DNA of 64,000 nt from Podarcis gaigeae. Lineage: Eukaryota. The notes beneath the pieces are model-generated. The model was not told the origin of the DNA. It ran no database searches and saw only the letters and a program-made list of their open reading frames with translations. Made by a program: the position numbers and the translations under genes. Shown piece by piece: positions 1 through 51,031 of this stretch. The stretch is taken from assembly GCA_964106915.2 (NCBI GenBank), contig OZ066920.1; one strand, 5' to 3'. Position 1 is the first letter of the stretch; every line of letters starts with the position of its first letter.

Positions 1-124
1 AAAGATAAGTAGCCCTACCCCACACTGACTATTCCCTCAAACCTTGGAAAAATATTGCCCAGTTTCACCACCAATGGGGCTGCAAACTTGAGGTCGTATG
101 TGTTCTCAGCCATAGAATTTATTT

Positions 125-1702
125 ATGACCAGATGTGGTCCAGCCGATGTGGACAGACTCCTCCGAGCTGGAAAGCCCACCACCTGTCCTCTTGACCCGT
201 GCCCGTCATGGCTGATTAGAGCATGTCCAGACGAGGTGCGGGCCCCCCTGGGGGATATCATCAATTTGTCCCTTGGCACCGGGATATTCCCAGGGGAACT
301 GAAGGAGGCAGTGGTGCGTCCTCTCTTAAAGAAAACATCATTAGATCCCTTAGATCTATCCAATTACCACCCGGTCTCGAATCTTCCATTCCTGGGTAAG
401 GTGATTGAGAGAGCGGTTGCTGAACAGCTTGGTAGGTTTCTGGATGAAACATCTGCTCTGGATCCATTCCAGTCCGGCTTCCGCGCTGGCCATGGAACCG
501 AGATGGCTCTGGTCGCCCTAACAGATGATCTCCGCAGGCAGCTGGATCGAGGCGGGTCGGGGCTGCTGATTCTTCTAGATCTGTCAGCAGCCTTCGACAT
601 GGTCGATCACAAACTCCTGGACCACCGCCTTGCCGACGTGGGGATCCAGGGCACAGTCCTTCAATGGCTGCGCTCGTTTCTCTCTGGTCGGGGACAGAGG
701 GTGGCGCTTGGGGGGGAATTGTCATCGCGCCACCCCTTGGTGTGTGGAGTGCCTCAGGGTGCGATTCTCTCCCCAATGCTTTTTAACATCTTTATGCGCC
801 CCCTCGCCCAGCTTGCCCGGAGTTTTGGGCTGGGCTGCCATCAGTATGCTGATGACACCCAACTCTATCTGTTGATGGATGGCCATCCTGACTCGGCCCC
901 AGACACACTGGCGAGATGTCTGGAAGCTGTGGCTGGATGGTTACGTGGGAGCCGGTTGAAGTTAAATCCTTCGAAGACAGAGGTCCTCTGGCTGGGCCGG
1001 GACGATATGGGATTGAGGGGGCAACTCCCATCTCTTGCGGGGGTGCAATTGGTGCCAGCACCGTCCGTTAAGAGTTTGGGTGTAATCTTCGATGCCTCCC
1101 TCTCTATGGAGGCGCAGATTACAGCTATAACAAAGGCGGCATTTTTTCATCTCCGCCAAGCTAAGCAGTTGGCCCCTTATCTCTCTCGCCCTGACCTAGC
1201 CACTGTGATCCATGCGACGGTCACCTCCAGACTGGATTATTGTAACTCGCTCTACGTGGGGCTGCCCTTGAGACTGACCCAGAAACTCCAGCGGGTGCAG
1301 AATGCCGCGGCGAGACTCCTTATGGGGTCTTCACTGTGAGATCACATTCACCCAGTACTATACCAGCTACACTGGCTCCCGGTGGAGTACAGGATCAGGT
1401 TTAAGGTGCTGGTTTTAACCTTTAAAGCCCTATACGGCCTAGGACCCTCGTACCTATGGGACCGCCTCTCCTGGTATGCCCCACAGAGAAACCTACGGTC
1501 TGCAAATAATAACATCCTCAAGGTCCCAGGCCTCAGAGAGGTTAGGCTGGCCTCAACTAGAGCCAGGGCCTTCTCGGCTGCGGCTCCAATCTGGTGGAAC
1601 GCTCTGTCACAAGAGACTAGGGCCCTGCGGGACCTGACATCTTTCCGCAGGGCCTGCAAGACAGAGTTGTTCCACCAGGCCTTTGGTCAGGGCGCAGCCT
1701 GA
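125..1702 (+). pseudogene. L2 ORF2 reverse transcriptase C-terminal part with one in-frame stop
   Basis: ORFs 125-1339 and 1382-1702 share a frame. A single TGA at 1337-1339 interrupts SL*DHIHPVLYQLHWLPVEYRIRFK. Confidence 0.88.
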
Positions 1703-1877
1703 CTCCCTCCTCTGGCAACCTGCACAGAATATTACTTAATTGGTTGCCATTAATTTGATTTTAATTAATTTTTATAATGAATATTTTGAATGTGTGATTA
1801 TTTGATTGTTTGATTATTTTATTATTGTTAGCCGCCCTGAGCCCGGCTTCGGCTGGGGAGGGCGGGATATAAATAAA

Positions 1878-1914
<37 letters not shown>
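125..1914 (+). mobile_element. L2-clade LINE, 5'-truncated, young, with (ATT)n tail
   Basis: RT motifs LDPCPSWL, QSGFR, LDLSAAFD, GVPQGAILSP, YADDTQLY, LKLNPSKTE, SRLDYCNSL. The 3' UTR ends AATAAAA followed by (TAT)n at ~1880-1914. Confidence 0.92.
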
Positions 1915-1916
1915 GA

Positions 1917-6125: not shown

Positions 6126-7507
6126 TTTATGAATGGTTTTGTTAAAATAAAATAAATCTCTAGAATTTTTGTGTGTGGTTGCAACCTCATAATATATGAG
6201 AAGCTCAAGCACATTATTTGAAGCTTAAGAAAAATGTCTGTGCATATTGATGCTAAAAATTATGTAAAGGTTTGCATTTGCAAAAGCATGGAAATTTACA
6301 TTAAGTGAGAGGTTCCACTCTAGGTGAAAGAGGAGGTCTGGTGTTTTTTCATTTCACAGGCTTAGGCTACCTGATGACTCATCATTGCAAGAAACCTAAG
6401 CTACAAAGTGCTCAAGAAGATAATTGCAGGCACTCTTGGGGGATGCTGATTATCCTGTCAGTAAGGTAAATCTTCCTGTTCTTTGACATTTGTGGGAAGG
6501 CTATGCTCACTGCACCATCTCTTTAAGAGGTAGGACCAGAAGAGTCTTTTCCAGTGGCCATAGGATATATAGATAAGCCTCTTTGACATTAGAGACAGAA
6601 GTCCTTTCTGACACCACTTGCCTCTTTGAATCTCTGGCCCAACTAATGGATCCCTGGCAGCAGAAGGGCCCCAAAAGGGGGCATGTTGGGGAGCAGTTGT
6701 GGTCCAAAGGATTTTCAGGCCTTCCAGTTCCCTGGGACACACACCTAAACTTGGAGAAAATTTAGGCATACTTTTAAATGTATCTAAAACTCTTCCAACT
6801 CTTCCAATGGGAGAGCAAATGGCCAAGCCAGACATGGAGGGAGAAATGAAGACCATTTCTATGCCCTCAGTTTCACCTTTGTAATTCATCAAGCTTCTCA
6901 TTAGGATTGCAGCCTTAATCACCTTTCTACCAGCTAGTTAAATTTTTGCTGCTTATAATACTTATTTCTTTTTAGTGCTTTAAGTTCGATTCTGCTCATT
7001 TCACTGAATGCTCATTTCACTGAATGCTTATTTTTTGCTTTGTGTACAATGGAGATTTTTGGGGAACTTTGTAAATAACTAAATAGACAATCAATTTATG
7101 TATAGGTTCAGTTCTGTGCATGCACAGAGATCACCACACATATTTACTAGCCCTTTTCCTTCCCTCTTGCCCCTGCAGCTGATCTTGTTGCTCCCTACCA
7201 CCCTCACCAAACACTTTCAAGCTGCTCCTCTGTGGTCTGCCTCTCATATTGCATCACTCAAAATATTTTTTGTAGATGAATAACTAGTTACTTGTACGTT
7301 TTTGAACAATGAATTCTACATGGAAATGTAAGATCTGTGTACCATGGAAACATTTTAAAAAATATATATAAACACTGATTACTGTCTTTCAGGTATTTGA
7401 AGCTCAATAAATATGTGGCTAAAGAGAGGATGGAAATGAACATGTACTGTCAGTAACAATGAAGGCATTGCAACACCATAATATGAGCCAAACTAAGAGC
7501 TTGGTGT

Positions 7508-7843
7508 CTAAACCGCAGAACGTAGGGCTGGCCGATCAGAAGGTTGGTGGTTCGAATCCCTGCGATGGGTTGAGCTCCTGTTGTTCGGTTCCAGCTCCTG
7601 CCCACTTAGCAGTTTGAAAGCATGCCAAAGTGCAAGTAGATAAATAGGTACCACTCCGGAAGTTAAATGGCTTTTCTGTGTGTTGCTCTGGTTCGCCAGA
7701 AGCAGCTTAGTCATGTTGGCCACAAGAACCGGAAGTTGTCTGCAAACAAATGCCGGCTCCCTTGGCCTATAGAGCAAGATGAGCGTGCAACCCCAGACTC
7801 ATCTGCGACTGAACCTAACGGTCAGGGGTACCTTTACCTTTAC
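7508..7843 (+). mobile_element. Sauria (Squam1) SINE, 5'-truncated
   Basis: B-box ggttcgaatcc, body gtgcaagtagataaataggtacc and (ACCTTT)n tail. 15-bp TSD ctaagagcttggtgt (7493) / ctaagtgcttggtgt (7844). Confidence 0.9.
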
Positions 7844-10179
7844 CTAAGTGCTTGGTGTAAAGAAAGTATAAATTGTTTTTTCCAGACAGTTCTACAAATT
7901 AACAATTTTGTTGTTGTTGTTAATTATAGGAGTATCTCAGAGTATTTTGTTGCTTTTGCATCTCAACAGAATCAAAATATTCTAAAGGGAAATCAGCAAC
8001 CATATGGACTCGTTCCCTAGGTTCATCCATGTGACTGCAAAAGAATATGAATATATGAATATAACCTTGTAAATAATTATTCAGTAGATACTCATTCACC
8101 TGAGAAGTGTTAGGGGCAGTGGAGGTAAATGTGGACAAACCCTCACAGTCTATGGATTCAAAGGACAGGAACTGAAGTCCACTTTTGATAGTAATACAGC
8201 TATGAAGAACACTATAGAAAGACATGCTTATATATTTTGGCAAGAAAAGCTTCCCCAATGATGTAGGTACAAAGAAAAAGAAAATATAGGATTATTGTGA
8301 AAACAAGTACATAATGCAAGTAACTGATATGAATTTAATGAAAATATTTATTTAAATGGCGATATATACAATGGAGTGGGGGGGTGACAACTGTTATCCA
8401 AACAAATATCTGTAATGCTTGTAAGTACGTAAATGAAACTAAGAATATAATTTATTGTGGTACATTCTGGTGAAAACACACACACTAATCCTAAATAATA
8501 ATAAAAGTAATGATGATGATGATGGCCTTGTATTACAACACACTTTCCACCCTTTTGGATGCTTTCTGCTGATACCTCAACTCCTGTTTGTGCTTTAATG
8601 AGCAAACAGTGCTTCTTCACATGACGGCAACCCATTTTCTTGGTAGAGAGGGCATTTCTGAGCATGTAAAGAGATATCCCCTTCCCTGTTTTCTGTTATA
8701 GGACAAGTCTTTGTGGATAAGGGACCTCTGTGTGCACATTGAATATTGCTTTCCCCCCCTTCTCTGCCTGCAGTTACTGGCTGGATCAGAATACAGTATG
8801 CTTGTGCTTTCAAAGATACAGACAATATCCCAAATGCTGCTGTAGATAATGACTTAGACTAGCAAGTTCTACCACAGATTCACTGCTGGACTCAGTATGT
8901 GTTGCTTTCTCTCATACTCTGTTTCTCCTTTGTAAAGTGGCTATAACAAAAGATGTTTCAAACATTACACTTTTACCAAAATTATGTGTGAGATCATCCC
9001 AGAAGGTGACCTAATGCATAAGCTCTGAGGTGGTTCTTAGTAGCCTGCCTTGGAGAATGGATTGTGAAGTACTTTGCATGGGCAAAGTTGAACAATCATT
9101 ATGTAGCAGTTTGAAACCACACTCTAATCTTGGTAGTATAGTATTTTTACAGTCAAAGACTATTTTCTAGTGATACAGACTGATATATATCACACATATT
9201 AAAATAACAGTACCTCAATTGATCACTAAGGTCAGTTTGTAGGTCAAGGTAGGGGAAGCAGGCTATATACTTACAACTGTTAGATGCAGTGAGTCTACTA
9301 GCAAAAGAAATATAGTTAAGTAATTTGGTTGTTAATTTTCCAGTGCAGGGTCAGCAGCATCCTTTTACATGCCTTAGGCAATATATGGTTCATTGTGTAA
9401 TGGAACCTGCCAGCCTGCCAGGTATGTTTATACATCCTGCACACTGGTACCATGTACTGGAGCAGATCAGAAATTTGACTCTAATTATGGCAGCTGTGTT
9501 CACTGATGCATCCAAATTAAAAGTGACCTGTGGGAGTCAAATCTGCATTGCTTTTAGTTTGAGCATCCTTTAGGGAATTGTATAACCTATGAAACATTCT
9601 TGGGTTCATTTCAAAAAGGCACAGACTTCAAGATGCAAAATTTCAAGCACCAGTTGTCTAGTTCACACATAAAAGCACAGTGCATGCCCGCTGAGACATT
9701 TTGATCTTCAGCCAGCCAGTAAAGAACCAGATGGACAAATTTTCTAAGGCAATACAAAGTTTCTCCTTATAGCTTTGTATTTGATTCTGCCCAGTGTTCC
9801 CAACCCACCCTTCCCCATGTCCTGTGTAGTTCATTACCAGTGCACGGATGCTGTTTTCTCAGAGGCTCCTGGTGACTGTATATTCTACATTGTGGCACAG
9901 CAGTAGGGCTGCCAGGTCTTCACCCAGAGTTGGTTCTTGTCCTTTTAAAAGTTCCGAGGCACCAAGAGTGGATGGATAAAGACAAACCTGTGTAGTAGCA
10001 GTGATGTCCCAACCCCAGGCATGTATAAGCTGCAGCAGGGGAACAGAGCACATATATCAATTTGTGTGGCATGAAACTATGCCACTCTGCTCCCACACCT
10101 ACCAAGTCAATCTCTACCTTACCCAATCACAGACTGGAGAGGAGGGTGGGGCAAAGGTTCTTTTGGAAATAGTGTAATG

Positions 10180-10315
10180 CAGGCATAGGCAAACTCCGGC
10201 CCTCCAGATGTTTGGGACTACAATTCCCATCATCCCTGACCACTGGTCCTATTAGCTAGGGATGATGGATATTGTAGTCCTAAACATCTGGATGGTCGGA
10301 GTTTGCCCATGCCTG
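10180..10315. mobile_element. hAT-derived MITE (~135 bp, hairpin)
   Basis: Long TIRs caggcataggcaaactc...gagtttgcccatgcctg and a perfect 8-bp TSD gtgtaatg. Confidence 0.9.
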
Positions 10316-12420: not shown

Positions 12421-15012
12421 GGACCTCCTGGTTGGTCTCCACCCTGAGTGCACCACAACTGACCACTCCAAAGAGATAGGCTTGTCTAAGACTTCACATG
12501 GGAATTTACCTCATTATCGAGAGCAATGCAGGCAAGTTCCTTATCAGTGGTGATAGGCCTGAGAGCCCCACCATCTCTTCCAAGGCCCACTACCCAAGGA
12601 CCCTGGTCAGTACTGCATCTGGCTGAGCTGGCTTAAAAACAGGAATTATGTGTAAGTTATGTGTATTTTAATGAACTGAACAGTGTGTGTATTAACAGTG
12701 CTCAGTTTATATTTTTAGTTGCTATTTTATTAATGCTGCTAATATTGTTTTATAGATTATAAATGCCCTAATGATTTGTTTGCTAAGACTTTTGGTGTAA
12801 TTGTGATGCTTCGCTTATTTTTAGATGCTTTTTTTGTTAATAGTGGTTTACAGATTTGTATTTGTTTCATGGATGATTTGTTAATTTTTTTATATGATTT
12901 TTGCTGTATTTGTAATGTTACATTATGTTTTATCGCTGGCATCCGTCTGCCTTGAGAGACAATGGAGTGCTCCTCTGATAAATAATAATGCAATAATTAA
13001 AACTGAAATACCATATATCTGGAATGTTGTTTCCCCATTCAGTCTGGCTCATTTTTGTGCTGTAACAAATATGCATAGTTATAATATATTATGGCCAATT
13101 TATCCACACCATTATATTTGCCTTTGCAATGACTAGTATGCTTTGACCGAACTACAGACTTTCTTAAATACTGTTTGATCATGTATCATTATATATGCTG
13201 GATTTTAAAAAGAGATGCCAGAAGTTATACACAGAAAAGTCTAGACAGATGTACTATTACTAGCTTGAGACCTCTGTGTAGGTAAACATTTGTGCTCCTG
13301 GACAACATGAACCCAGTCCTGCTACCTCTTCAGTTGTAGCTATTATGGAATTAGCAACATATGACTTCTTTTCCTTTCAGTTCCTGCTTCTGTAGTGGAT
13401 GTATACCAGGGTGTGAGCACACAAAAGATTCTGGTGAATGTGGCTTGCCTGAGCTAAATGGGAATCTCTCCAAAGTGTCCCAAACTGAAGCAGGGACCTC
13501 TGACGCAGTATCAATTGACAAAGTGGTACCATGATAATGGGATTATCTCAACATTAAGTACCTTACAGCACTATGTGATTGATACAAGTCTCTCTAAAAT
13601 AAAATGGCATAACTTCAGTTCAGCCTTTTTTGTCTATCTGTGTTTTAAGAATGTCCATGCATAACAGAAAACCTTGGTTCACTAATATCGTATTCCAGAA
13701 CATTTCTGTATCTGCTGTAGGATTCTATGTTTCAAAAATTAATTGGAAAATGAACTGGAAATTAAAATACAGGAAAACAACAAGGTGGGGGAGGGAGAGA
13801 CATAAACATGCACAGAAGCTCAATCTAGCAATTGTTGCCCCTAGGTAAAGAGTAAGAATGACAGTTTGTGTGCATAGGTCCCGTGTGATATTGCTGCCAT
13901 TTATTCTATAACTCCAGCTGAAAGAAGATGAAAAGAAAAAATATTTTTATCTAACCTTGAGGGATTCGGTTTTGCAGCATGCTTTAGACTAGAGATGATT
14001 GCTAATGGGCAAAAGTTAAAGATGTTAAAACTGCAATATAGTGAATAATTCAACTGGCAAATGCATGACAACTTAAAATTATCTCCTGATAAAGGGGCCA
14101 TCGGGGGAAAAGAGAGAGAGAAATTCCTTGGATTCTTTGTTGTGGGGAACAAATAGAAGCTTTACAGCACAATAAAATCAATCATCCCAATGTAATGGTT
14201 TTTAATAGGCACAGGAGTCACAATGCAAACACAAGGGCTTTTACCTTTCTATAAAGGAAGCAGATACATGTGCACATTGCATTTAACACACGGATTATTA
14301 GAGTCCAGAAAAATGAATGGAGCAGCTGCTGTGTGCAGGGGAGGTGTATGCGCTTATTGGAGAGGTTCTGATGTTTGCATGGTGTGCAAAACACGATTAC
14401 AAAAGCTACAGGAACTTGGACCTCACTTTTCATTTGCTGGTTAGATACACATTCACCCCAGTATAAAATGCATACAGTACAGTATCCTCCTTCAGATGTG
14501 AATGGTGCACACATGCAGGATTAGGAAGGAGTGCCCAGAAGGAGCAGCTAGACTGCAAACTATTTTGTTATATACATTTCGCATTGACAGGATGCATGTG
14601 TATTTTGTCCTAAGCATACGTAGCCAAATAGAAAAAAATGTTTTTGAAGAATCCACCCCATGGCAAAGAGAATAAACATACACAACTGGATACATTGTTA
14701 CAGCCAAGGTTTTTAAAAGAAACAAAAGCAAAATGCATCTTTCCTTGTCTCTTTTACTTTCATCATGACATTAAAAATGCTTAATACAAACTTAATACTA
14801 GGTATAAAAACAGAACACTGAACAAAGATGGCATTCTGGGGGTTGGACTGATTTTATTTTATTTTCTACTAGGAAAATAATGAATTAGCTTTTAAAAAGG
14901 AAAAGTGAATGGGGAAAAAATCACTAATGGTGATGGCTACAAAGATTATGATGAATCAATTATTATGGTAAAGATAGATACATTTTTCTTGAGATGGATA
15001 CTTGTCATTTTA

Positions 15013-16885
15013 TTTTATTTTTTAATATAAATTTTTATTGAATTTTCAACTTTTTTAACACACAAACACACATAAAAACAAAAACAAAACAAAACATCTC
15101 AAATTTCATACTCTTACTTTCGTTGCCTTCTTTCATTGACTTCCCCACACCCCCCTTCCCACCTTCCAATTTCATTAATTATCTCAGCAAGTTATTTCCT
15201 CTCATCTCTTAAATACTATTCTTATCTTTTCTTAAAATTTATCATTTTTACTTGGTCCAGTTTTACTTATCCAATTTTACACATTTAATCCTTTTTCTAA
15301 GGTCGGCCCAAATTCTCTCCCACGAATTCCTCCCTTCTTGTGTTAAACCAAAGATCATAATATTTCAATTCAAAATCTCAGATTCTTACTACTCTACTCT
15401 CCCCTCCCCCCCCTGGCCCGGTTCCTGTCCCTTCCCAAACCAATGTCCTCAAAAGAGGAAAAAAAAACAGTTTAGCCCGGATTTCTCACATCAGAGGCCC
15501 TTAAGCCCCAGTTAGTCTCTCTCCACCAGTTTTGTTGATATTCCTTTTTGTTGGCCCTCTCTTCTCGAGGAAGTTCTGTCACAAGCCCCTCATATTTTCC
15601 TCCTTCCAAATCATTCAGAAACAGTTTCTGCCCAGGATCCACCAATCTCCCATGCTCCAGCCTGAAGAAGAAGTCCCCAATATACTTATTTGTTCTTTTA
15701 TAGTCCAATATTCCAGTTATTCCAGGGGTTTCTTCTTTTAACTTTCTCTCCTTTTGCAGATTTGTAATCCACTGGTCATCTTCTTTGTTTCCTTTGTTCC
15801 CAAAGGTTACAGGCTCTGGATTGATATTCTCCACCTGGACTTCCTCTTCTCCTTCTTCTTCTTTTTCCCCCAGTTCCAAAGTTATCTCTTCTTCTGCAGC
15901 TGCAGAGTTTTTTTCCATTCACTTAATGCCATCCACAGAGTTGTTTAATTTAAGATTGAAGGTCACCAGCTGTTTACTCATGGCCATACTCTGCTCTTGT
16001 AGAATTCCCACAAAAGAAAACATTTTCTCTATCTCTGCCAGTAATTTTCCTTCAGCAGCCATTGCAATGTCTTTAGTTTCCTCCAGGGGGATTACCATCA
16101 TAATTCTTTTCCAACAGTCTGTTACTTTGTTATTCAGAATTACTTTGTTTCCAGTCAATTCAGTTTTATTGTAGCACTTTTAATCCAAAAAGATATTTGT
16201 AACACAGTTCCAGGCCTTGGCCAGCCGTTTGACAGCTCTTTTGACAGCTGTCAAACTCTTTATTCTTTCCTCGGGCTCACACGCAGGGCGCTCCCGGGTT
16301 CCCAAAAAAGGGGGGGGGGGTTAACCAGAAAAGAAAAACTTCTGAAATTTCTCTCTCCTCCTCTCCAGCACAGTGACTTCTTAGTCCAATTCGTAAAAGT
16401 TATCTGTTTAAACACCAAAGTCTTTCCGCCTTAATGCTCCTCTCCTTGCTTTAAAACTTTTGGTGGGGGGGGGGGAGTGTGGACTTCCTTTTTAACACGT
16501 CCCCCGATCGTACTCGAATTCAAGGATAAAAACTTTAGTGCCGAAATTTCATTTTACTCACGGGTTGCTTGTTTCAGTCCAAATTTCAGGAAGAAAGACA
16601 GCGCTCTTCGGTCATGGCTCGCGGCTTCGCTCCGCCGAGGTAGCGATGAACTCTCAGCACCGCACCGCTCTCCAGTCCACTCCGTAGCCTTTAAAAAGGC
16701 TCTTCGCGGGTCGGGGAGGGCGCTTAAGGTGCCCACCGAGTTACCAGGTCTGCAGGCTTCCGCGCCTGCGGTTTTTAAGGGTCCCCGTGTCGCCGGCACG
16801 GCAAGACCCGTCCTCGACGGAGCCGATTCCCTCCGGAGCTCAGAGGGAATCCGCCATTACCCGTTCGCGCTATCCCGGAAGTCTC
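15013..16885 (-). mobile_element. Full-length ~1.87-kb non-autonomous L1-dependent retroelement (HAL1-like), single ORF, no RT
   Basis: TSD gatacttgtcattt(ta) at 14997 and 16886. The target reads TT/AAAA in element sense. 5' end GAGACTTCCGG...AATGGCGG, G-rich 3' UTR, AATAAA (~15039-15034) and an A-rich tail. Confidence 0.85.
15472..16101 (-). pseudogene. Element-encoded ORF (~196-209 aa) interrupted by one TGA; unknown product
   Basis: ORFs 15919-16158 and 15472-15918 are contiguous and in frame, separated only by the TGA at 15921-15919. ATGs lie at 16101, 16098 and 16062 (gcaATGg). Confidence 0.65.
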
Positions 16886-17777
16886 GATACTTGTCATTTT
16901 AAAAGCATCATAGCAAGAAAAAGTGGCCCATCCTGTCAGATTGGATTTAGCCCTGCTATGCATTTCCTCTTGTACCATTCCTCCCAACTTGGTCAGATAT
17001 TGTCTCGGAGATTGATACTAATCCCAGTCCAAAAGGTGCAAAGGGACACTCAGCCAGCAATCCCCTTTCCTCTGTGCTGCAACACAAGCAGTTTTTTAAT
17101 CTCTCATAAATGCAAAACAGGGTGCATTGAGAGTGATTGAATGATAACAGTAATAGTGTATGGATTTTATTGTGTTGTTTTTTTAAAAAAAAATGATGTG
17201 GATGCAGGCATGACTGCATAGGTAAAAGGGCCCTCTGCATCAAAGTTCTAGCCTGGTTAAAGAGGGCTGGCCTATGATGACATCTTGCTCTCTGAGGCAA
17301 TGGACAAGATGGCAACCCCTCCCTCATAGCACATGCAGAAGGGAACTGGATTGGCTGTTATACCACATCATACACCACACCAGAGGGTAGCAGGCCAGTG
17401 TAAAGCTCACACTGCATGCACAGCTTTGTCTTCCAATGGAGGAAAATAGTTGGGGGTGGAAAGACTTGGAAGGATGACCGCCTCCTTGCCCCAATACTCT
17501 TTAGCATGTTGCCTAAGATGGCCCCTCTACCTAATGCTGGGGCTGACCTTGAAGCTGAAGGAGCACCAGAGGTAATCTGATGGAGAGTCAGACAAAACTA
17601 AGTAACAGCTTCTGTCACAGATACAATATCAGATCCAATGCTTATGCCAATTTCTATTAGAATATGCTCGCCCTTGATTATTTGAGAACATGGAACTATT
17701 ATTTGGCTATTCACTTTGTGTAAGGGAGAGACACTACACCTGCCAGCAATTCCTCATTCTTCACATGATGTCTACTT

Positions 17778-17911
17778 CAGGTATAGGCAAACTCGGCCCT
17801 CCAGATGTTTTGGGACCACAACTCCCATCATCTGAGCACTGGTCCTGTTAGCTAGGGATGATGGGAGTTGTAGTCCCAAAACACCTAGATGGCCGAGTTT
17901 GCCTATGCCTG
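17778..17911. mobile_element. hAT-derived MITE, same family as 10180-10315
   Basis: TIRs caggtataggcaaactcggcc / ggccgagtttgcctatgcctg and a perfect 8-bp TSD gtctactt. Confidence 0.9.
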
Positions 17912-18417
17912 GTCTACTTGATTCATATGCATGTAGGGTCCCAGAGACGGACTTTGGAAATCTTTTGTAATATGGCACCATGTGTGAGGCCATTTGGTGT
18001 CCCCAAATGGATCTTCTCAGTTATGGATCTTCCAAATTTTGTGCCTCCTTGGCTTGGCACCCTTTGTGAGGCAACCACCTGCACTACCCTAAATCTGGCA
18101 CACAGGATCCTGTTTGTGAGCCTCCGTCAAATATGGTGATCCTGCATAGCAGATGTAGCTTACAGAACAAGTGTCCATCAAGGAATGACTTGCTGCCTGA
18201 AGTTTTGAGGATACTGTTTTGATCCTCTGTAAAAGTAGAAAACGTTCTCCATCAAAAAAGAGATCAAACATTGCACTTTGTTCATCAATATTAACAGATT
18301 AAAAACAAATACTATTTGTTTTAATGTTCACCAATATATGGGGATGAGAGAGCTAGGTAACTTGCAGGTTCCACTTGTACCATCTTCATCCCAGTACTTA
18401 AATATATATGCAAAATA

Positions 18418-18656
18418 CAGTGTTACCTCGGGTTAAGTACTTAATTCGTTCTGGAGGTCTGTTCTTAACCTGAAACTGTTCTTAACCTGAAGCACCACTT
18501 TAGCTAATGGGGCCTCCAGTGGCTGTGCCGCCAGAGCCCGATTTCTGTTCTTATCCTGAAGCAAAGTTCTTAACCTGGAGCACTATTTCTGGGTTAGCGG
18601 AGTCTATAACCTGAAGCGTATGTAACCTGAAGCGTATGTAATCTGAGGTACCACTG
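18418..18656. mobile_element. Tc1/mariner (pogo/Tigger-like) MITE, ~240-bp family
   Basis: TIR cagtgttacctcgggtta / taatctgaggtaccactg, with TA on both sides. Confidence 0.88.
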
Positions 18657-21437
18657 TAATCTAGTAAAGTAGAACATGATAACTTTAAATTGTACAACCT
18701 AATTTTGTGCATATTTCTTTGGCAACATACCCAGATACATTCAATTAGACTTATGGAGGGTAAGCGTGCATGGGGTTTCAAACTCTGATGCACTTAACTG
18801 CGACTGAACCTCAATGAATACAGTGAGTCTTGAAAAGCAGCATACGATAGTGCTGTAAAAATAACACTTCAACTGAAAGGTACCACTTTATCACAACACA
18901 TTACCTGTTTCAATATGGACATGTGCTGACCGATTCCTGAAAAAAAATCCATTACGTGGATATTAATGTTACTCCTATTTAACATTACACTAGTGACATG
19001 GTGTGCAAACTAGATGCAATTTTATTGTCTGGCACAAGGACCAAGGAAGCTGATATTTCGGCCAACAGAATTTACTAATTTGCTTGTGCGTTTGCTACTC
19101 ATTTGAAGAATAAAAGCTAGTATTTCATTCCTCATAAGAGACTTATCAAAAAGTAAAAAGCTAAAGAATAAAACAAGAACAAATTAAATGGTGTTGAAAG
19201 CCTCAAGGGGAAAAGTAATTCAGTTTGCGTTGCTTGGGATTTTAATTGCTGGCAAATTATATTTTGGAATGCATTCAGGAGATGAAATGGTTTCTGCTCT
19301 GTTTTGTAAATCATTTTCATATTTTACAGGCATGCAGCCAACTGGTTATAATGACATATTGAACTCAAAGTCCCACATGATGTGTACTGATGATACACTC
19401 ATACTGAAAAGAGGATTTCCAACTATGCTTTCTAACTATATCTAACCATCTGTCTATCTATGAACTGTTGACTGCAAAAGAATATGAATATATGAATATA
19501 GCCTTGTAAATAATTATTCAGTAGATACTCATTCACCTGGTCCTTTACCTATCTGCACACCTGCCCCACCTCCACCATCAAACAAAGGGACAACTTTTCT
19601 CCAGCTAGCACAGTAATTTGATTAGTAGCACTAGAAGTAATTATTAGAGAGATAACTAGTCAAAAAACAAAGGTTGGTAGCTCTTCTCTTAGTTTTTCTC
19701 ATTTACTTCTTCTTACTGTATTGCCGATTTAAGACTAACACACAGGCTATTGAGTTCAAGAGTTGCTCAAATTTGCATCTCTTTGATGTTGGCATTTAAA
19801 CTGTTCTAAACTCAAATCTATAAACTGCATGCAACTTTTTTCCCCGTTGAGTATCTCCATGTTTTGTAAGTGTCAAATGCCACCAACGCAAGTTCCCAAA
19901 TAGAATGCTGCACACCAAGTATCAGCCCGTGCAATGCAACATGCTGTCCATTGAAAAAAAAGAAAGACATGTTTTCCTCCTTATTTTTCCTACCAGCTAT
20001 GATGTTATTCATGAACCTTGAGGACACTTAGCCCTAAACTGGGATTTTGGCACTATGAAGACAGGGTGCTTTTGAACAGGACTGCACCTCTTGGGATTAT
20101 TCTGCTTCAGAATAGCCTTAGAAAGACTGCAAGTTCAATTTCTTGTCATGACAAAATCTCTCCATACCATCACTTCATGATAAGGCTACCCCAGAAGCCA
20201 CTTCATTGACATGCTAGCTTTCACAGGCAGGGTATATTTGATATCAGCATCCATTCATGCAATTTCCTTCTCCAAGAACATTCTGAATAGCTAGATTCTC
20301 ACTGGAGAAATAAAGAGGAATAATTTACGCTCACTTTCTCTAAATGGATAGCTTTTAAAGTACTGGAAATTATGGAGATAAATAAACAGGCCAAATTCAA
20401 ATGACCATAAGGAGTTATACACTTAAGTCCTACTTTATGAGAAGTCTGGGGATAATAATTTTGTACTTATAAAAGTTGCATTATTAATTTAAAAGGATAT
20501 GCCTGTGGTTTAACATCTAAATAATTTTAAAGCAAAATTTCTTTTTCCTTTTCAAGCGATAAGTTCATAATGTTATTGAATGTGCTTAAAAAGCCCAGCC
20601 CTATGACAGAAAGAAGAGGCACATTGTTTTTCTACCTTGCAACAGTGACCAGTTTTGAGCCACATTAACCAGAGGCTCATGAAATCTAAGGATTTGCCTG
20701 AGGTCCAACAAGATTGTTTACCCTTTTTTATCCATGCTAGCTAACTGCAGGAGGTAACCATCAAACAGAGCATGCAGGCAATACGCTGAGAGGTCCTAGG
20801 GAGGTTGCAAGACATTTGAGATGGGGTACCTGCCAAAGTTAACCTATCTCCTGATGAAATGCTGATGAGCAAGAATGAACAGCTCCATCCTGCAAGCTAC
20901 TGCTTCCTCATTGCCCATAAATTTATCTTGGGGTATGGGAAGAAGGAGAAAGACATTAGTGAGTACTCCCCACACTCTGACAGAGAATTTCTGGGCACTT
21001 TTACTGAATACTCATAAAAGCTCAAGCCTCTGGGGCATTTGATTGGAACACATGCAAAGGCTTGTCTTCTTTTAGGAATAACTTTCCTAGGACCTTTACT
21101 GCTAAGGGAGGTGGGCTATTAGAAGAGAGATTCAAGCATGTTGGGCACTTGCTGAGACCCAAGTGTGGTCACCCTTGTTCTTAGGCCAATGGCAGCTGTA
21201 ATGTTGTGGGGTAATCTGGTCCTCTGCTAGTGCATAGTAGTGGTTTGTCAGATGTGGGATTGCAATAATTGGTGATGACTGCTGCCCAGTGGTATTGTTA
21301 GATGCTTAAAGGACTTAAGTACCATGAAAAAACTTTTGCATAAAATTTGCATATGTATTGATGAACATTAAAGGCTGACTTTCAGAAGCAAAAACACAGC
21401 CTGTGTCTCTCGATGTCAGGGTTTACCCTAAGCTATG

Positions 21438-21801
21438 GGGACACGGGTGGTACTGTGGTCTAAACCACAAAGCCTAGGGCTTGCCGATCAGAAGGTCGGC
21501 AGTTCGAATCCGCACGATGGGGTGAGCTCCTGTTGTTCAGTCCCAGCTCCTGCCCACCTAGCAGTTCGAAAGCACGTCAAGTGCAAGTAGATAAATAGGT
21601 ACTGCTCCGGCGGGAAGGTGAACAGCCTTTCTGTGCGCTGCTCTGGTTCACCAGAAGCGGCTTAGTCATGCTGGCCACATGACCCAGAAGCTGTCTGTGG
21701 ACAAACGCCGGCTCCCTCGGCCTATAGAGCAAGATGAGAGCTGCAACCCCAGAGTCATTTGTGACTGGACTTAATGGTCAGGGGTACCTTTACCTTTACC
21801 T
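21438..21801 (+). mobile_element. Sauria (Squam1) SINE, full length
   Basis: gggacacgggtgg head, B-box gttcgaatcc, (ACCTTT)n tail, and a short tatgg(gg) duplication at the flanks. Confidence 0.9.
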
Positions 21802-27015: not shown

Positions 27016-27382
27016 GGGACGCAGGTGGCGCTGGGACACGGGTGGCGCTGTGGGTTAAACCACAGAGCCTAGGACTTGCCAATCAGAAGGTCGGCGGTTC
27101 AAATCCCCGCAACGGGGTGAGCTCCCGTTGTTCAGTCCCAGCTCCTGCCAACCTAGCAGTTCGAAAGCACGTCAAAGTGCAAGTAGATAAATAGGTACCG
27201 CTCCAGTGGGAAGGTAAACGGCGTTTCCGTGCGCTGCTCTGGTTCTCCAGAAGCGGCTTAGTCAAACTGGCCACATGACCTGGAAGCTGTACGCCGGCTC
27301 CCTCGGCCAATAAAGCGAGATTAGCGCCGCAACCCCAGAGTCAGTCACGACTGGACCTAATGGTCAGGGGTCCCTTTACCTT
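27016..27382 (+). mobile_element. Sauria (Squam1) SINE with duplicated 5' head
   Basis: Full SINE body. TSD tattgctgtaaa (27003) / tattactgtaaa (27383). Confidence 0.92.
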
Positions 27383-27444
27383 TATTACTGTAAAGTTAGC
27401 TTACATTGTCACCGTTTGTCCCCAAAATTCACTCTGATTTACAA

Positions 27445-29413: not shown

Positions 29414-29765
29414 GGGATGCGGGTGGCACTGTGGGTTAAACCACAGAGCCTAGGACCTGCCGATCAGAAGGTCAGCGGTTCGAATCCCCATGACGGGGTG
29501 AGCTCCCATTGCTCGGTTCTTGCTCCTGCCCACCTAGCAGTTCAAAAGCACCTCAAACTGCAAGTAGATAAATAGGTACCACTCCAGCGGGAAGGTAAAT
29601 GGCGTTTCCGTGTGCTGCTCTGGTTCTCCAGAAGTGGCTTAGTCATGCTGGCCACATGACCCGGAAGCTGTACGCCGGCTCCCTCGGCCAATAAAGTGAG
29701 ATGAGCACTGCAACCCCAGAGTCGGTCACAACTGGACCTAATGGTCAGGGGTCCCCTTACCTTTT
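29414..29765 (+). mobile_element. Sauria (Squam1) SINE, full length
   Basis: Full body. TSD tatctaggcttg (29402) / tatctaggattg (29766). Confidence 0.92.
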
Positions 29766-29792: not shown

Positions 29793-30025
29793 CCATCAGA
29801 TGTCAAGGAAATAAACAACTATCCGACTTTCTGAAGACATCTTAAGGCAGCCCTGTTTAGGGAAATTTTTAATGTTTTGTTTAAAGTGTTTAAAGTTTTA
29901 CTTTGTTTTTAATGTTCTGTTGAAAGCCACTCAGAGTGGTTAGGGAAACCCAGCCAGAAGTGAGGGGTTGAAATAATAAATTATTATTATTATTATTATT
30001 ATTGTTGTTGTTGTTGTTGTTGTTG
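29793..30025 (+). mobile_element. L2 3' end with (ATT)n(GTT)n tail
   Basis: Reverse-complement match to 41253-41420 (gcagccctgtttagggaa, cagagtgg...gggaaacccagccaga). Confidence 0.8.
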
Positions 30026-36434: not shown

Positions 36435-37028
36435 CATAGTCTCCAACATTTCTCCTATGAAAACAGGGACATCCCATTCCATAATGATAATTTCACTACA
36501 GTAGTACCTTGGGTTACATACGCTTCAGGTTACATATGCTTCAGACTCCGCTAACCCAGAAATAGTACCTCGGATTAAGAACTTTGCTTCAGGATGAGAA
36601 CAGAAATCGTGCGGCAACGGTGCGGCGGCAGTGGGAGGCCCCATTAGCTAAAGTGGTGCTTCAGGTTAAGAACAGTTTCAGATTAAGAACAGACCTCCAG
36701 AACTAATTAAGTTCTTAACCTGAGGTACCACTGTATTTATACCCCCCCACACACACACACACATCTTATTGGCTTGCCCCAGCACTCTGGGCAGCTTCCA
36801 ACATATATAAAAAACCATAATAAAACATTAAACATTTAATAAACTTCCCTATACAGGATTGCCTTCAGATGGCTCAGGGGTTGGATAACTCCACACCGTC
36901 CAATGTATCCCCAATGAAACTAGGGACACTCTAAAGAAACACAGGATATTCCAGGATCAAATCAGAAATCGGGACGGCTTCTCTAAATCAGGGGTGTCTG
37001 TGGAAAACAGGGACACTTGGAGGGCCTG
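36435..37028. mobile_element. Composite GTCCC-repeat DNA element (reverse of the 2970-3590 type) containing an L2 3' fragment
   Basis: Termini catagtctccaac / ttggagggcctg, AGGGAC repeats, an internal second copy of the left terminus (~36891-36930) and an L2 tail at ~36736-36875. Confidence 0.65.
36499..36733. mobile_element. Tc1/mariner MITE (~240-bp family, reversed), nested
   Basis: cagtagtaccttgggtta / taacctgaggtaccactg and a TA TSD. Confidence 0.88.
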
Positions 37029-38458: not shown

Positions 38459-38688
38459 ACCTTGGGTTACAAACTTACAGTAATTCGTTCTGGAGGTCCG
38501 TTCTTAACTCGAAACTGTTCTTAACCTGAGGCATGCTTTTGCTAATGGGGCCTGCCGTATTGCCTGTGCGCGATTTCCGTTCTCATCCTGGGGCAAAGTT
38601 CTCAACCCAAGGTACTACTTCTGGGTTAGCAGAGTTTGTAACCCGAAGCGTTTGCAACCCGAAGCGTTTGTAACCCGAGGTAACACTG
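38459..38688. mobile_element. Tc1/mariner MITE (~240-bp family), left TIR clipped
   Basis: Body matches the 18418 copy. Right end taacccgaggtaacactg followed by TA. Confidence 0.8.
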
Positions 38689-41160
38689 TATTGTACAGTT
38701 GAGTTGTAGGAAGGCAAAATTCTGTTTTGAAAGACATAATGCTATGCATCTTCAGGGAGAAAAGGAGGAATTTAAATACTTCTGCCTACAAACCATGCTT
38801 TCTCCTCTGAATGCACCTATGCACAGGTAAAAATGTGGCATTTGACCATGTTCTCTTGGCTTGTTATTTTAATATTGTTCTCTTTATGGTTGTTTTATTA
38901 CATGTTCTTAAATTTGATGCACATAGACCTGCCCACACATTCTCCATCACTCACAACATCCCATTTTGTTTTTCTTGTGAAATCTTCTGCGATGCAAGCA
39001 AGGTTCAGTTTAACATGCTAGCCGAGCTATCAGTGTTTTGTTTCTTTTTTACAGCTGCCAAAAAAGTCAGTCCTACTGTCTCTGTATTTTAGGGACATAT
39101 ATACCTTTGACTCACTCCCTAAGAATGCATTTTCTCATATATTTTGAGAGGCTGGAGAAGCTTAGGGGCTTATTAAAGGGGATTATGATGAGAACAAACC
39201 CTAAGCAATTGTGAACAGTAGATATATACATGTTTCTGTGACCTAGAAACTGGAAAGGTTTGATTTCCTTGCCTCAACTTTTCTGCACTGATACCAGTTA
39301 ACCCTTCCATGTGTTTCATCCTTTTGCTCCTCTACAAACTTTCTTCTCCTATTACTTATGTCACGTTGTTCCTTCCTTATAATTTACTTTAAAAAATATT
39401 TTAGGGTTGTCTACTAAACAAGAGACAAGAGGTGAAATTCAACATTGCTCCAAGACACGTGTTTTGTTTTTGCAAGCATTTCAGTTTACTGGACAGAACA
39501 ATGGCCTGCTCTTTCTCCATTCACTATTCTGGGGTTCTCCTGAACCCTCCTCCCAGCCAGTTTTGGGACTCTTGAGTGTGTGCATATAGAAGAGATGGAG
39601 GAAATCCCATTGCAGCAGTGCTTGTGCAAGGCCTCTGCTGACAGGACTTGTGAGGTAAATCCTCCCCAAGACATATAGAAGCTCAGGAGAAACCTGAGAG
39701 TAGATGAGCAACACTTTTGTATTTGTGCTATAAAATGAAGGCAGTGCTCATCCTACATTGTTTGTTAAAGTGAAATAAATAACAACAAATAAATAATATG
39801 AGTATAATAAGTGTGTTTCACTGGTCATCATTCCTGTCAGTCACTAGACATTGTGGCCTGGCTCTCATATATCTGTGGTGGCGGCCTTGATCTAAGATTG
39901 TATTCTAAGGAGGTCTCAAAGCTCCTGAATCATTCAGAACCACAGTACGTGGTCGTACAACTAGTTTATCCCTCCTGACTGGCAGAGGAAAGAAGAGTTA
40001 ACAAACTAGGTATTCTAATTCAGATCTTTCAGGTGTGGAGTCTGACTAGACCAGCTAACCAACTTATAGACTCCCCTTGAAGAAGGCAGAAGACTAGTTG
40101 CAAAAGCAGTCATAATCCAAAGTACAATATGTCATGCACAAGAATTTATGCAGTAGAAGCAGTGGGCTTTCTCCCCTATTCCCAGTAGCAACAGCTAAGA
40201 ACACATGATCAGAATTAAGAAAACCTGGGAGACTGCTTGTTAAATAAACAGAGTTCTTCATATTGCCCTCTTTTCGTTGTTTTGAATGAATGCATAGCTT
40301 TGCAAATAGTGCTACAAAGATTCATTTGAATAATGGGGTGGTGATGGAATAGCAATGAATTGTTGCAATAATTAAAAGGTAGAGGTGTTTGTTTGTTTTT
40401 TGTTTTGAGGTGCTTAACATTTGATAATCAAGCCAGTTGACTGATGCTTCTATTGTTTAAAAAATGAGTGCTATGCTTGTTATCATGATAGCACATTATA
40501 AAACCACTGAACATTTCTACCCAGCAGCCCTAATTTATCTAGGGACCCCCAGCCTAAGGAATCTTTCCCTAAGAACTCGAATCCTGTTTGACAACATATT
40601 TACTATAAGCATAAATTCTACAGTCCGATGTCTAAACTTCTTGATTTCATAGCATGTGACAATATATATCTGTGGGACAATATCAAAATGTGGAAGACCT
40701 GAATTTGTTGTGACTGTATTTCTACCAGCAATTTTATTATCTGTTCAAAATCATGCCTGGAGAGTAAACAAAAAATCAGTAGACTTGGACTAGACTGTAA
40801 GCATGCAAATCTCTGTCTGCTTCAGAACTTAATTTACTTTGGGAAGATAAATATTCACCCAGCAATATTCATCTAAAGATAACAGTTGTTTTATATTTGA
40901 TTCTGAAACTGTTTGCTACAACATGCATATTTTCAGAACGTACATATTAAGATGTGTAAATCCCTTCACAATGGTAGACTATTGACAACATAAAGACAGC
41001 AGTGAAGTTGTGGTGTGCAGGTGTTCCAGCTGCACAAGCACCTATCATACTGGAATAATGATGCCCTGAAATAAGATATTTCCAAATACTGTTGCATTTA
41101 TAATTAAGTGCTCTTTCTAAAATAAATCTAGTCTATGCATTAGCTTTGTTCATATTTCAG

Positions 41161-41201: not shown

Positions 41202-41254
<53 letters not shown>

Positions 41255-41785
41255 TTATTTATACCCCGCCCATCTGGCTGGGTTTCCCCAGCCACTCTGG
41301 GTGGCTTCCAACAAAATATTAAAATACAATAATCTGTAAAACATTAAAAGCTTCCCTAAACAGGGCTGCCTTCAGATGTCTTCTAAAATCTGGTAGTTGT
41401 TTTTCTCTTTGACATCTGGTGGGAGGGTGTTCCACAGGGAGGGTGCCACTACCAAGAAGGCCCTCTGCCTGGTTTCCTGTAACTTCGTTTTTCACAGCGA
41501 GGGAACTGCCAGAAGGCCCTTGGCACTGGACCTCAGTGTTTGGGCAGAATGGTGGGGGTGGAGATGCTCCTTCAGGTATACCGGACCGAGGCCATTTAGA
41601 GCTTTAAAGGTCAGCACCAACACTTTGAATTGTGCTCAGAAACATACTGGGAGCCAATGTAGGTCTTTCAAAACCGGAGTTATGTCGTCTTGGTGGCCAC
41701 TCCCAGTCACCAGTCTAGCTGCCGTGTTCTGGATTAGTTGTAGTTTTCAGGTCACCTTCAAAGGTAGCCCACAAAGAGCGCACAT
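41161..41785 (-). mobile_element. L2 LINE 3' fragment with compound microsatellite tail
   Basis: The reverse strand encodes the L2 RT C-terminus (LHWLPV...FKVLVLTFKALNGLGPVYL). An (AAT)n/(GTT)n tract lies at 41161-41253. Confidence 0.88.
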
Positions 41786-44108: not shown

Positions 44109-44350
44109 CAGTGGTACCGCTAGTTACGTACTTAATTTGTTCCGGAGGTCCGTTCTTAACCTGAAACTGTTCTTAATCTGAAGCACCACTTTAGCTAATG
44201 GGGCCTCCCACTGCTGCTGCGCCGCTGGAACACGATTTCTGTTCTCATTCTGAAGCAAAGTTCTTAACCCGAGGTAATATTTCTGGGTTAGCGGAGTCTG
44301 TAACCTGAAGCATATGTAACCTGAAACGTCTGTAACCCGAGGTACCACTG
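44109..44350. mobile_element. Tc1/mariner MITE (~240-bp family)
   Basis: cagtggtacc...taacccgaggtaccactg and a TA TSD. Confidence 0.88.
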
Positions 44351-50095: not shown

Positions 50096-50156
50096 GTCTA
50101 GAGCAAGTATTTTAAGGAACTTTTTTGATTCTGGACTGTGTTATTTTCTTACAGTA

Positions 50157-50389
50157 CAGTGGTACTGCGAGTTACAAACACTTTGGGTTACAAACACATT
50201 AGGTTACAAACTCTGCTAACCCAAAACTCTGCTAACCCTTGGGTTGAGAACTTTGCCCCAGGATAATGAAAATCATATGGTGGTGGTGTGGAAGGCCCCA
50301 TTAGCAAAAGTGCACCTCAGGTTAAGAACGGTTTGGGGTTAAGAATGGACCTCCGGAATGAATTAAGTTTGTAACCCGAGGTACCACTG
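50157..50389. mobile_element. Tc1/mariner MITE (~240-bp family, reversed)
   Basis: cagtggtact...taacccgaggtaccactg and a TA TSD. Confidence 0.85.
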
Positions 50390-51031
50390 TAATTGTCTTG
50401 TGCTTTAACCTCTTTCCTAAAACATTATGGATAAGTAAAAATGTACAAGTCAAAATTGAGAATTACAGACTAGGAAAGCGGTTATTCTGACTTGTGAAAA
50501 AGAAGTTCCTTATATATTCAAAATAGATACATTTGTCTTCAATTCCATACACTACACTTATGCCATTCCATTTGTCATCCTTGCTTTTAACCTTTCCATC
50601 CAAGCATTTTCCTGTATTGTTCATCCTATACTACAATCCATGCAGGTTTAAACTACATTTTTCCAGCATCAGTGTAGGACCTTCATATGTACGATGAATG
50701 CATCCCACAAATCATTCATATATGTATAGAATGATTTGGGTCCTTCTCACCAGCATACAGTCACCTTCCTTGTACCACAGCTGTTCCCTGTGTCATTCTA
50801 GTTTCTGTGTACTGATGCAAACATAGTTCTGGTTCTGATCATGCTTTAGGCGAGTAGGAATGAGCCCTGGGTTTATCTGCATGAAAATTGAAGCATTCAC
50901 TTTTTACTTAAGAACAAACTTAAGTAGCTCCTTGTTTTGCATCAATTCAGGGAGTTATGGTTTGTTCTGAAAGAAGTTAGTTTAAGAAAACCAGATTAAA
51001 TTGTGATTTGATATCCAAATTAGTTAACTAA

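What the first reader, a model, noticed from the sequence alone, without database searches (positions are those of the whole stretch)
14997..16901. Complete 1.87-kb 'half-L1'-like retroelement: L1 integration hallmarks, one ORF, no reverse transcriptase
Seen: a 14-16 bp direct repeat gatacttgtcattt(ta) at 14997 and 16886 brackets a minus-strand unit. The unit has a CpG-rich 5' region, one ORF, a G-rich 3' UTR, AATAAA and an A-rich tail, and the empty site reads TT/AAAA. Established: TT/AAAA, ~15-bp TSDs and poly(A) are signatures of L1 ORF2p target-primed reverse transcription, and mammalian HAL1 elements are ORF1-only L1 derivatives. Inference: both ends are intact with no EN/RT sequence between them, so this was probably retrotransposed as a unit rather than 5'-truncated. 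It could be a protein-coding, non-autonomous parasite of lizard L1. I do not recognise it as a described family.
Basis: partly seen in the sequence, partly recalled or inferred. Interest (0 to 1): 0.8.

Follow-up and report, generated by a model that had tools for sequence, protein, structure and literature searches.

The report
Protein-coding RT-less retroposon family in wall lizards
This is one recently inserted, now disabled copy of a small lizard "jumping gene" that has no copying enzyme of its own but encodes a fast-evolving ~200-residue helical protein, and it was most likely pasted in by the machinery of L1 elements.

Summary
A 1,874-bp minus-strand unit (15012-16885) sits between perfect 15/16-bp target-site duplications at a TTTT/AAAA site. 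It has a CpG-rich 5' leader, one reading frame, a G-rich 3' UTR, AATAAA and a short A-rich tail, and no RT or EN. The frame is broken by one in-frame TGA (15919-15921).

It is not a one-off. Profile searches found 13 protein clusters of 176-208 aa. Their contigs are colinear with the window unit through leader, ORF and 3' UTR. Homology ends about 10 nt after AATAAA, and the flanks beyond that differ. Very different lineages occur in the same sequencing run. In Podarcis lilfordi, seven near-identical gene models lie on at least five chromosomes. The ORF evolves under purifying selection (dN/dS 0.31).

The window is Podarcis XKR4 intron 1.

The "half-L1" label is not shown. The protein has no L1 ORF1p domain (Pfam, PDB and AlphaFold2 all negative), and no L1 sequence was available for comparison.

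Best reading: an RT-less, protein-coding poly(A) retroposon family mobilised in trans by L1-type machinery.

Other first-reader notes from this scan, all unchecked, report similar TSD-flanked 1.7-2.2-kb elements elsewhere in this genome.

The parts
14997..15011 (-). 3' target-site duplication (AAAATGACAAGTATC; 16 bp if 15012 is counted)
   Evidence: exact match, only two occurrences in the window, 0.02 expected.
15012..15023 (-). Short impure A-rich tail (AAAAAATAAAAT)
   Evidence: In relatives, homology stops at the same place and a poly(A) run or unrelated flank follows.
15034..15039 (-). Polyadenylation signal AATAAA, conserved in the family
   Evidence: CAATAAAAATTT is shared by the window, L001, L005, L009 and L011.
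15012..15471 (-). 3' UTR (about 460 nt) with G-rich tracts at 15401-15419 (G4-type motif) and 15138-15163 (conserved ...GGGGGGTG.GGGGAAGTC)
15472..16101 (-). Reading frame of 209 codons plus stop. Upstream in-frame ATGs at 16101 and 16098. The family-conserved start (MAAEGK...) is at 16062. The frame is broken by TGA at 15919-15921. It ends ...LRASDVRNPG then TAA (15472-15474).
   Evidence: 78% identity to P0001. dN/dS 0.31. Neutral simulation P<0.0002.
15919..15921 (-). In-frame TGA that disables this copy; all relatives carry a sense codon here
16102..16885 (-). 5' leader (784 nt). The first ~300 nt form a CpG island. ETS-type ACTTCCGG at 16875-16882 and YY1-type AATGGCGG at 16851-16858. 16-nt perfect palindrome at 16240-16255. 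Only 3 short upstream ATGs.
   Evidence: Colinear with L008 (from element position 350), L013 (from 188, 73-77% identity) and L010.
16886..16900 (-). 5' target-site duplication, preceded by TTTT (cleavage site TTTT/AAAA)

Best explanation
The stretch is one young but disabled copy of a Podarcis/lacertid family of short (about 1.9 kb) poly(A) retroposons. These elements have no reverse transcriptase or endonuclease. They carry a single ORF of about 176-208 codons. The ORF encodes a fast-evolving, mostly helical protein with an N-terminal long helix (probable coiled coil) and an invariant C-terminal motif, ...L[RK]ASDVRNPG. Proposed cycle: (1) Pol II transcribes the element from a promoter carried inside the CpG-rich 5' leader (inferred). 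(2) The RNA is polyadenylated at the element's own AATAAA (shown by contigs that end in poly(A) there). (3) The ORF is translated and probably coats or marks its own RNA, as LINE ORF1/Gag proteins do (inferred from purifying selection, not shown). (4) An L1-type ORF2 protein supplied in trans nicks a TTTT/AAAA site, primes on the A-tail and copies the RNA, leaving a 15-16-bp TSD (the hallmarks are shown; the identity of the helper is inferred). This copy landed in sense orientation in intron 1 of XKR4 and has since acquired one premature stop.
For: Integration hallmarks. Family: phmmer of the intact relative P0001 against 1.84 billion representatives found 6 further clusters of 176-204 aa and no longer proteins. 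A profile word search found 12 clusters. Colinearity of the whole unit: L001-L007 cover element positions 629-1868 at 84%. L008 covers 350-1587 at 76%. L013 covers the 5' leader from position 188 (73-77%), although its protein is only 33% identical. L009 and L011 reach the 3' end. Homology stops about 10 nt after AATAAA, followed by poly(A) in L001 or by different flanks in L009, L011 and the window. Divergent lineages share a sample: L004 and L010 both come from ERR13998651, and L012 and L013 both come from ERR14654793. Dispersal: one cluster at 90% or more holds 7 Podarcis lilfordi gene models on at least 5 chromosomes. Coding constraint: dN/dS is 0.31 against L001 and 0.28-0.81 across lineages. 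There is no indel in 624 nt of ORF, against 16 gap columns in 583 nt of UTR. A neutral simulation using the UTR substitution spectrum expects 62.7 +/- 3.9 amino-acid changes and 5.9 stops; 50 and 1 were observed. The leaders are depleted of upstream ATGs in four lineages. The database holds the annotated lacertid proteomes, yet no named host gene matches.
Against: The species and library type (RNA or DNA) of the Logan runs are unknown. No L1 sequence was available, so neither the helper nor any L1 ancestry was tested. The promoter role of the leader rests on composition, two short motifs and conservation; ATG depletion is also seen on the antisense strand. The protein has no recognisable domain and only a low-confidence model, so its role in mobility is conjecture. 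The P. lilfordi copies belong to a different lineage (about 40% identity) from the window copy.
Confidence: 0.7

Rival explanations
1. Strict half-L1 (HAL1-type): the family arose from a lizard L1 by loss of ORF2. Its ORF is a shortened or diverged L1 ORF1 (or an ORF1/ORF2-tail fusion), and its UTRs are L1 UTRs. This is a special case of the best explanation, not exclusive of it.
For: L1-type insertion hallmarks. An N-terminal long helix as in ORF1p coiled coils. A purine-rich sense strand and a G-rich 3' UTR. Unchecked first-reader notes in the same genome call similar elements L1-derived.
Against: No Transposase_22, trimerisation-domain or other Pfam hit for 10 family members, even at E up to 10. 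No hit to any PDB chain, including the L1 ORF1p and ORF2p chains. Exhaustive phmmer found no protein longer than 204 aa. The models show no RRM or CTD-like domain. UTR homology was not testable.
Confidence: 0.3
2. A lineage-specific host gene family (a fast-evolving coiled-coil protein, for example germline-expressed) that spreads by occasional retroposition. The window copy would be a dead retrogene copy rather than a member of a selfish element family.
For: Purifying selection on the ORF. Transcript-like contigs that end in poly(A). Modest numbers of known copies.
Against: Every lineage keeps the same intron-less leader-ORF-3' UTR unit, and homology ends at the poly(A) site. The leader is better conserved than synonymous sites between distant lineages, as expected for a promoter that travels with the RNA. 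Near-identical copies lie on at least 5 P. lilfordi chromosomes. No homologue was found in the annotated proteomes of four other lacertid genomes or other squamates, although these are in the database.
Confidence: 0.15
3. An ordinary processed pseudogene of a single-copy spliced cellular mRNA or lncRNA.
For: One copy in the window. TSD plus poly(A), as for any L1-made retrocopy. All seven P0001-type contigs start at the same base (element position 629), which at first looked like an exon junction.
Against: L008, L010 and L013 run straight through position 629. There are 13 protein clusters, with several per sample and on several chromosomes. The parent gene structure could not be examined.
Confidence: 0.05
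4. A one-off internal deletion of an ordinary full-length L1, or a 5'-truncated L1.
For: L1-type ends.
Against: The stop codon-to-3' UTR junction and the leader-to-ORF junction are the same in relatives that differ by 16-35% in DNA. No RT or EN remnant was found.
Confidence: 0.02

Closest known systems
HAL1 (half-L1) of mammals
   Same: A non-autonomous poly(A) retroposon that keeps a 5' leader, one ORF and a 3' UTR but has no ORF2, and inserts with L1 hallmarks. HAL1 is described as an L1 derivative encoding only ORF1p that arose several times in mammals (PMC5753468).
   Different: Here the ORF is not recognisably ORF1p: about 200 aa, with no RRM or CTD and no Pfam hit. L1 ancestry of the UTRs is untested. 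The host is a lizard. Several deeply diverged lineages (protein identity down to 33%) all lack RT.
HeT-A of Drosophila (Gag-only non-LTR element that relies on RT from TART/TAHRE; own knowledge; family named in PMC5537684)
   Same: A protein-coding non-LTR retroposon without its own RT. Its own fast-evolving structural protein is kept under selection, and the promoter travels with the element.
   Different: HeT-A targets telomeres and its Gag has zinc knuckles. The lizard element inserts at TT/AAAA sites in ordinary chromatin and its protein has no knuckle.
L1-made processed pseudogenes / retrogenes
   Same: The same insertion chemistry: TSD, poly(A), TT/AAAA, no introns.
   Different: Retrocopies of cellular mRNAs normally lose their promoter and do not found lineages. 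Here there are many lineages of full units with a conserved CpG-rich leader.
Lizard L1 families (Anolis: 20 coexisting, low-copy, young families; PMC3787681)
   Same: The population structure is alike: several divergent lineages coexist, each with few, young copies. L1 is the presumed helper.
   Different: The element is 1.9 kb rather than about 6 kb and has no ORF2.

Membership tests
HAL1 / half-L1 | ORF encodes an L1 ORF1p homologue (coiled coil + RRM + CTD; Pfam Transposase_22) | tested here: not met
   No Pfam family for the window pieces (E up to 1) or for ten relatives. No PDB hit to L1 ORF1p. AF2 models are all-helical with pLDDT 46-48. A very diverged or truncated ORF1 cannot be excluded.
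HAL1 / half-L1 | Lacks ORF2 (EN/RT) between intact ends | tested here: met
   The same short 3' UTR follows the stop codon in L001, L008, L009, L011 and L012.
HAL1 / half-L1 | 5' and 3' UTRs derived from a co-resident L1 family | not testable with these tools
   There is no L1 in the window; the only LINE there is L2/CR1-like. No lizard genome or repeat library is on offer.
L1-dependent (poly(A)) retroposon | TT/AAAA cleavage site, 7-20-bp TSD, AATAAA and a 3' A-tail | tested here: met
Interspersed repeat family | Multiple dispersed copies with different flanks | tested here: met
   Different 3' flanks in the window, L009 and L011. Seven P. lilfordi gene models at 90% or more identity on at least 5 chromosomes.
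Autonomous L1 / LINE | Encodes reverse transcriptase and endonuclease | tested here: not met
SINE | Pol III head derived from tRNA, 7SL, 5S or snRNA; non-coding | tested here: not met
   Rfam scan of 14800-17100 at E up to 1 gave only one sub-threshold lncRNA match. The element carries a selected ORF.
Processed pseudogene | Colinear with the spliced mRNA of one intron-containing parent gene; copies are dead ends | tested here: inconclusive
   A parent locus could not be searched for. Many lineages of full units argue against dead-end copies.

The most novel reading that the evidence does not exclude
An old RT-less retroposon lineage that is not simply a cut-down L1. It encodes its own novel, non-ORF1p protein, kept under purifying selection in at least eight coexisting lineages because the element needs it to capture L1 ORF2p in trans. 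That would make it a protein-coding hyperparasite of L1 in lizards, with a promoter that travels in its CpG-rich leader.
Probability: 0.35. Interest if true: 0.75.

Novelty: new variant of a known kind. Interest (0 to 1): 0.6.

Why it matters
The known protein-coding, RT-less LINE parasites I could identify are HAL1 in mammals and HeT-A in flies. A third, independent case in squamates, with a protein that is not recognisably ORF1p and that has been kept by selection through deep diversification, would open an experimental question. What must an RNA bring along, beyond a poly(A) tail, to compete for L1 ORF2p? Does a self-encoded RNA-coating protein give 'cis-preference by proxy'? There is also a practical point: these units are currently annotated as 'hypothetical predicted protein' genes in P. 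lilfordi and probably inflate gene counts in lacertid genomes.

Tried and rejected

2. The search of earlier findings by sequence was blank for both protein and DNA.

3. Pfam, the PDB sequence profile (only chance KCC transporter matches at E 0.46 or worse) and Rfam gave nothing.

4. ESM Atlas gave no usable hit for P0001. For P0147 the nearest named clusters were retrotransposon Gag-type families (Retrotrans_gag, Ty3_capsid, LDOC1, PNMA) at 0.78-0.84. That is below the 0.9 level, and shuffled proteins reach it a third of the time. I treat it as a lead only.

5. Two AlphaFold2 runs (8 and 16 sequences) gave pLDDT 46-48. I therefore ran no fold search and no complex prediction.

6. Exon-junction idea: all seven P0001-type contigs start at element position 629. 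I rejected this because L008, L010 and L013 are continuous across that point. The break is more likely a graph branch next to a conserved 16-nt palindrome.

7. The first profile word search timed out and a repeat worked.

8. Run accessions were not found in the literature. No paper describing such an element in Podarcis was found. Bao & Jurka 2010 on HAL1 is not held.

The window frame was read with X at its stop for the alignment and tree.
Full report
OBSERVATION. On the minus strand, a 1,874-bp unit (window 16885 down to 15012) is bracketed by AAAATGACAAGTATC at 16886-16900 and 14997-15011. This 15-mer occurs exactly twice in the 64-kb window. Shuffles expect 0.02 matches, and none of 100 gave two. 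One more shared base makes the repeat 16 bp. The upstream copy is preceded by TTTT, so the empty site reads TTTT/AAAATG..., the L1 endonuclease type of site (established knowledge).

The unit has these parts, in order:
- It starts with a CpG island. The first 300 nt have GC 0.61-0.65 and CpG observed/expected 1.07-1.16.
- A 784-nt leader follows.
- Then comes one reading frame, from 16101 to 15472.
- Then a 460-nt 3' UTR with G-rich tracts at 15401-15419 and 15138-15163.
- Then AATAAA (15034-15039) and a 12-nt A-rich tail.

No RT or EN domain is present, and there is no second copy in the window.

RELATIVES.
- A word search with the 148-aa piece found one cluster, P0001 (208 aa, intact, 78% identical). 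It has ten members from Logan assemblies of different runs.
- Seven of their contigs (L001-L007) align to element positions 629-1868 at about 84%. L001 ends in AATAAA plus poly(A), as a transcript would.
- An exhaustive phmmer search with P0001 against 1.84 billion representatives found six more clusters (P0011-P0016, 176-204 aa, 35-57% identity). It found no longer protein.
- A profile word search raised the total to 13 clusters across the two searches.

The contigs of these clusters show that the whole unit is shared, not just the ORF:
- L008 is colinear with element positions 350-1587 (76%).
- L013 matches the leader from position 188 at 73-77%, although its protein is only 33% identical.
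- L010 is colinear through the leader-ORF boundary.
- L009 and L011 reach the 3' end.

At the 3' end, homology stops about 10 nt after the conserved CAATAAAAATTT. What follows is poly(A) in L001 or unrelated sequence in the window, L009 and L011. So the poly(A) site is the family's terminus at independent loci.

Deeply diverged lineages share a sample. L004 and L010 both come from ERR13998651, and L012 and L013 both come from ERR14654793.

One cluster at 90% or more identity consists of seven 'Hypothetical predicted protein [Podarcis lilfordi]' gene models on at least five chromosomes. A protein tree resolves about eight lineages. The window copy groups with P0001/P0005 and P0011.

SELECTION.
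- Window versus L001: dS 0.39, dN 0.12, dN/dS 0.31.
- Across lineages dN/dS is 0.28-0.81.
- The ORF has no indel in 624 nt, while the UTRs have 16 gap columns in 583 nt.
- I placed the observed 95 substitutions at random, using the substitution spectrum of the UTRs. This expects 62.7 +/- 3.9 amino-acid changes (minimum 51 in 5,000 trials) and 5.9 stops. The observed values are 50 changes and 1 stop.

The ORF has therefore been a working coding sequence for most of the divergence. The window copy was disabled recently. This agrees with its perfect TSD and undecayed CpG island.

The leaders of four lineages hold far fewer ATGs than composition predicts: 3 against 13.1, 2 against 12.2, 2 against 8.4 and 0 against 7.3. 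This fits scanning to the ORF. A weaker depletion on the antisense strand tempers the argument.

THE PROTEIN. Conserved features are the start MAA[ED]GKL.AEIERMF.LVGILQEQ, an acidic variable middle, and the invariant end ...L[RK]ASDVRNPG. The family start codon corresponds to window 16062; this lineage has two extra upstream in-frame ATGs. No family was recognised:
- Pfam found nothing for any of ten members, even at E up to 10.
- A PDB profile search gave only chance matches.
- AlphaFold2 with 8 and 16 sequences gave pLDDT 46-48. The models show one long N-terminal helix of moderate confidence and no beta-rich domain.
- ESM Atlas features point weakly (0.78-0.84, below the reliable range) to retrotransposon Gag-type clusters. 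This is a lead only.

CONTEXT. The ORF at 60534-61883(-) holds exon 1 of XKR4. It is 99% identical to P. lilfordi and P. raffonei and 98% to P. muralis. The window is therefore Podarcis, and the element lies in XKR4 intron 1 in the gene's orientation. The same search shows that the protein database contains the annotated lacertid proteomes. Apart from the P. lilfordi 'hypothetical' models, the element's protein has no annotated relative in them.

INTERPRETATION. Shown:
- an L1-type retroposition event;
- a dispersed, multi-lineage family that shares the full leader-ORF-3' UTR unit;
- termination at its own poly(A) site;
- purifying selection on the ORF;
- absence of RT and EN in every lineage for which the 3' part is known.

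Inferred:
- The CpG-rich leader is an internal Pol II promoter. Its first 35 nt carry an ETS-type ACTTCCGG and a YY1-type AATGGCGG. That these motifs cluster just downstream of start sites, and that a YY1 site guides initiation in human L1, is my own knowledge and was not tested here.
- The helper is L1 ORF2p. Among lizard LINE clades only L1 makes such insertions (established knowledge; lizard L1 diversity in PMC3787681).
- The protein serves the element's own mobility.

RIVALS.
- A strict half-L1 origin remains possible (0.3) but failed the one testable defining feature, ORF1p homology.
- A host retrogene family (0.15) is hard to separate in principle. It is disfavoured by the conserved travelling leader, by near-identical copies on many chromosomes, and by the lack of annotated orthologues.
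- A single processed pseudogene (0.05) conflicts with the colinear relatives, and a one-off L1 deletion (0.02) is refuted by them.

COMPARISON AND NOVELTY. Functionally the element resembles mammalian HAL1 (definition in PMC5753468) and Drosophila HeT-A. I do not file it as HAL1. I found no description of it in the literature held here. I could not consult Dfam or Repbase, so an existing library entry is possible.

Other first-reader notes in this same genome report TSD-flanked 1.7-2.2-kb 'L1-like' units with a ~200-aa ORF on other pieces: s1-698008, s1-689269, s1-689298, s1-701537, s1-689310 and s1-689258. They are unchecked and I could not read their sequences. They are leads that the source genome holds more copies, and that the full family length may be nearer 2.2 kb.

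LIMITS. The species and library type of the Logan runs are unknown.

Noticed in passing
window 8032-8102 and 19469-19539: A 71-nt direct repeat, 99% identical, with no homology at all in either flank. The two copies are 11.4 kb apart and bracket the region that contains the retroposon. No poly(A) or poly(T) lies at the inner edges. Unexplained; it could be a very long TSD, a short young repeat or a rearrangement scar.
   Followed up: partly
window 1-1915 (+): The 3' part of an L2/CR1-type LINE. It has an RVT_1 ORF at 125-1339 (E 1e-35), then about 500 nt of 3' region ending in ...GGGCGGGATATAAATAAAATTT plus an (ATT)n tail at about 1880-1915. The same tail motif recurs at 29953-30025 and, inverted, at 41204-41271.
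   Followed up: partly
window 60391-61883 (-): Exon 1 of XKR4 inside a GC- and (GCC)n-rich CpG island. The XK-related domain is 99% identical to P. lilfordi and P. raffonei. The rest of the window is therefore XKR4 intron 1.
   Followed up: yes
window 16240-16255 (-): A perfect 16-nt palindrome, TTTGACAGCTGTCAAA, inside the element's leader. It is conserved in relatives, and all seven P0001-type Logan contigs begin exactly 2 nt upstream of it. It could be a protein-binding site or only an assembly-graph break.
   Followed up: partly
window 17778-17911: An inverted repeat with 55-nt arms, 91% complementary, and a 24-nt spacer, about 0.9 kb from the element. It looks like a MITE or hairpin. A related half-copy lies at 10236-10284.
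   Followed up: no
window 7486-7842, 21438-21798, 27033-27384, 29414-29765: Four copies of a ~300-360-nt SINE-like repeat, 77-90% alike. A second short repeat family occurs in both orientations at 18413-18658, 36497-36738, 38481-38695, 44106-44352 and 50150-50394.
   Followed up: no
L001-L007 (Logan contigs of the P0001 cluster): The seven contigs, each from a different run, differ at 47 of 1,226 columns (0.4-2.5% pairwise) in mosaic combinations of two haplotype-like patterns. This could be high polymorphism of one locus or collapsed assembly of several young copies.
   Followed up: partly
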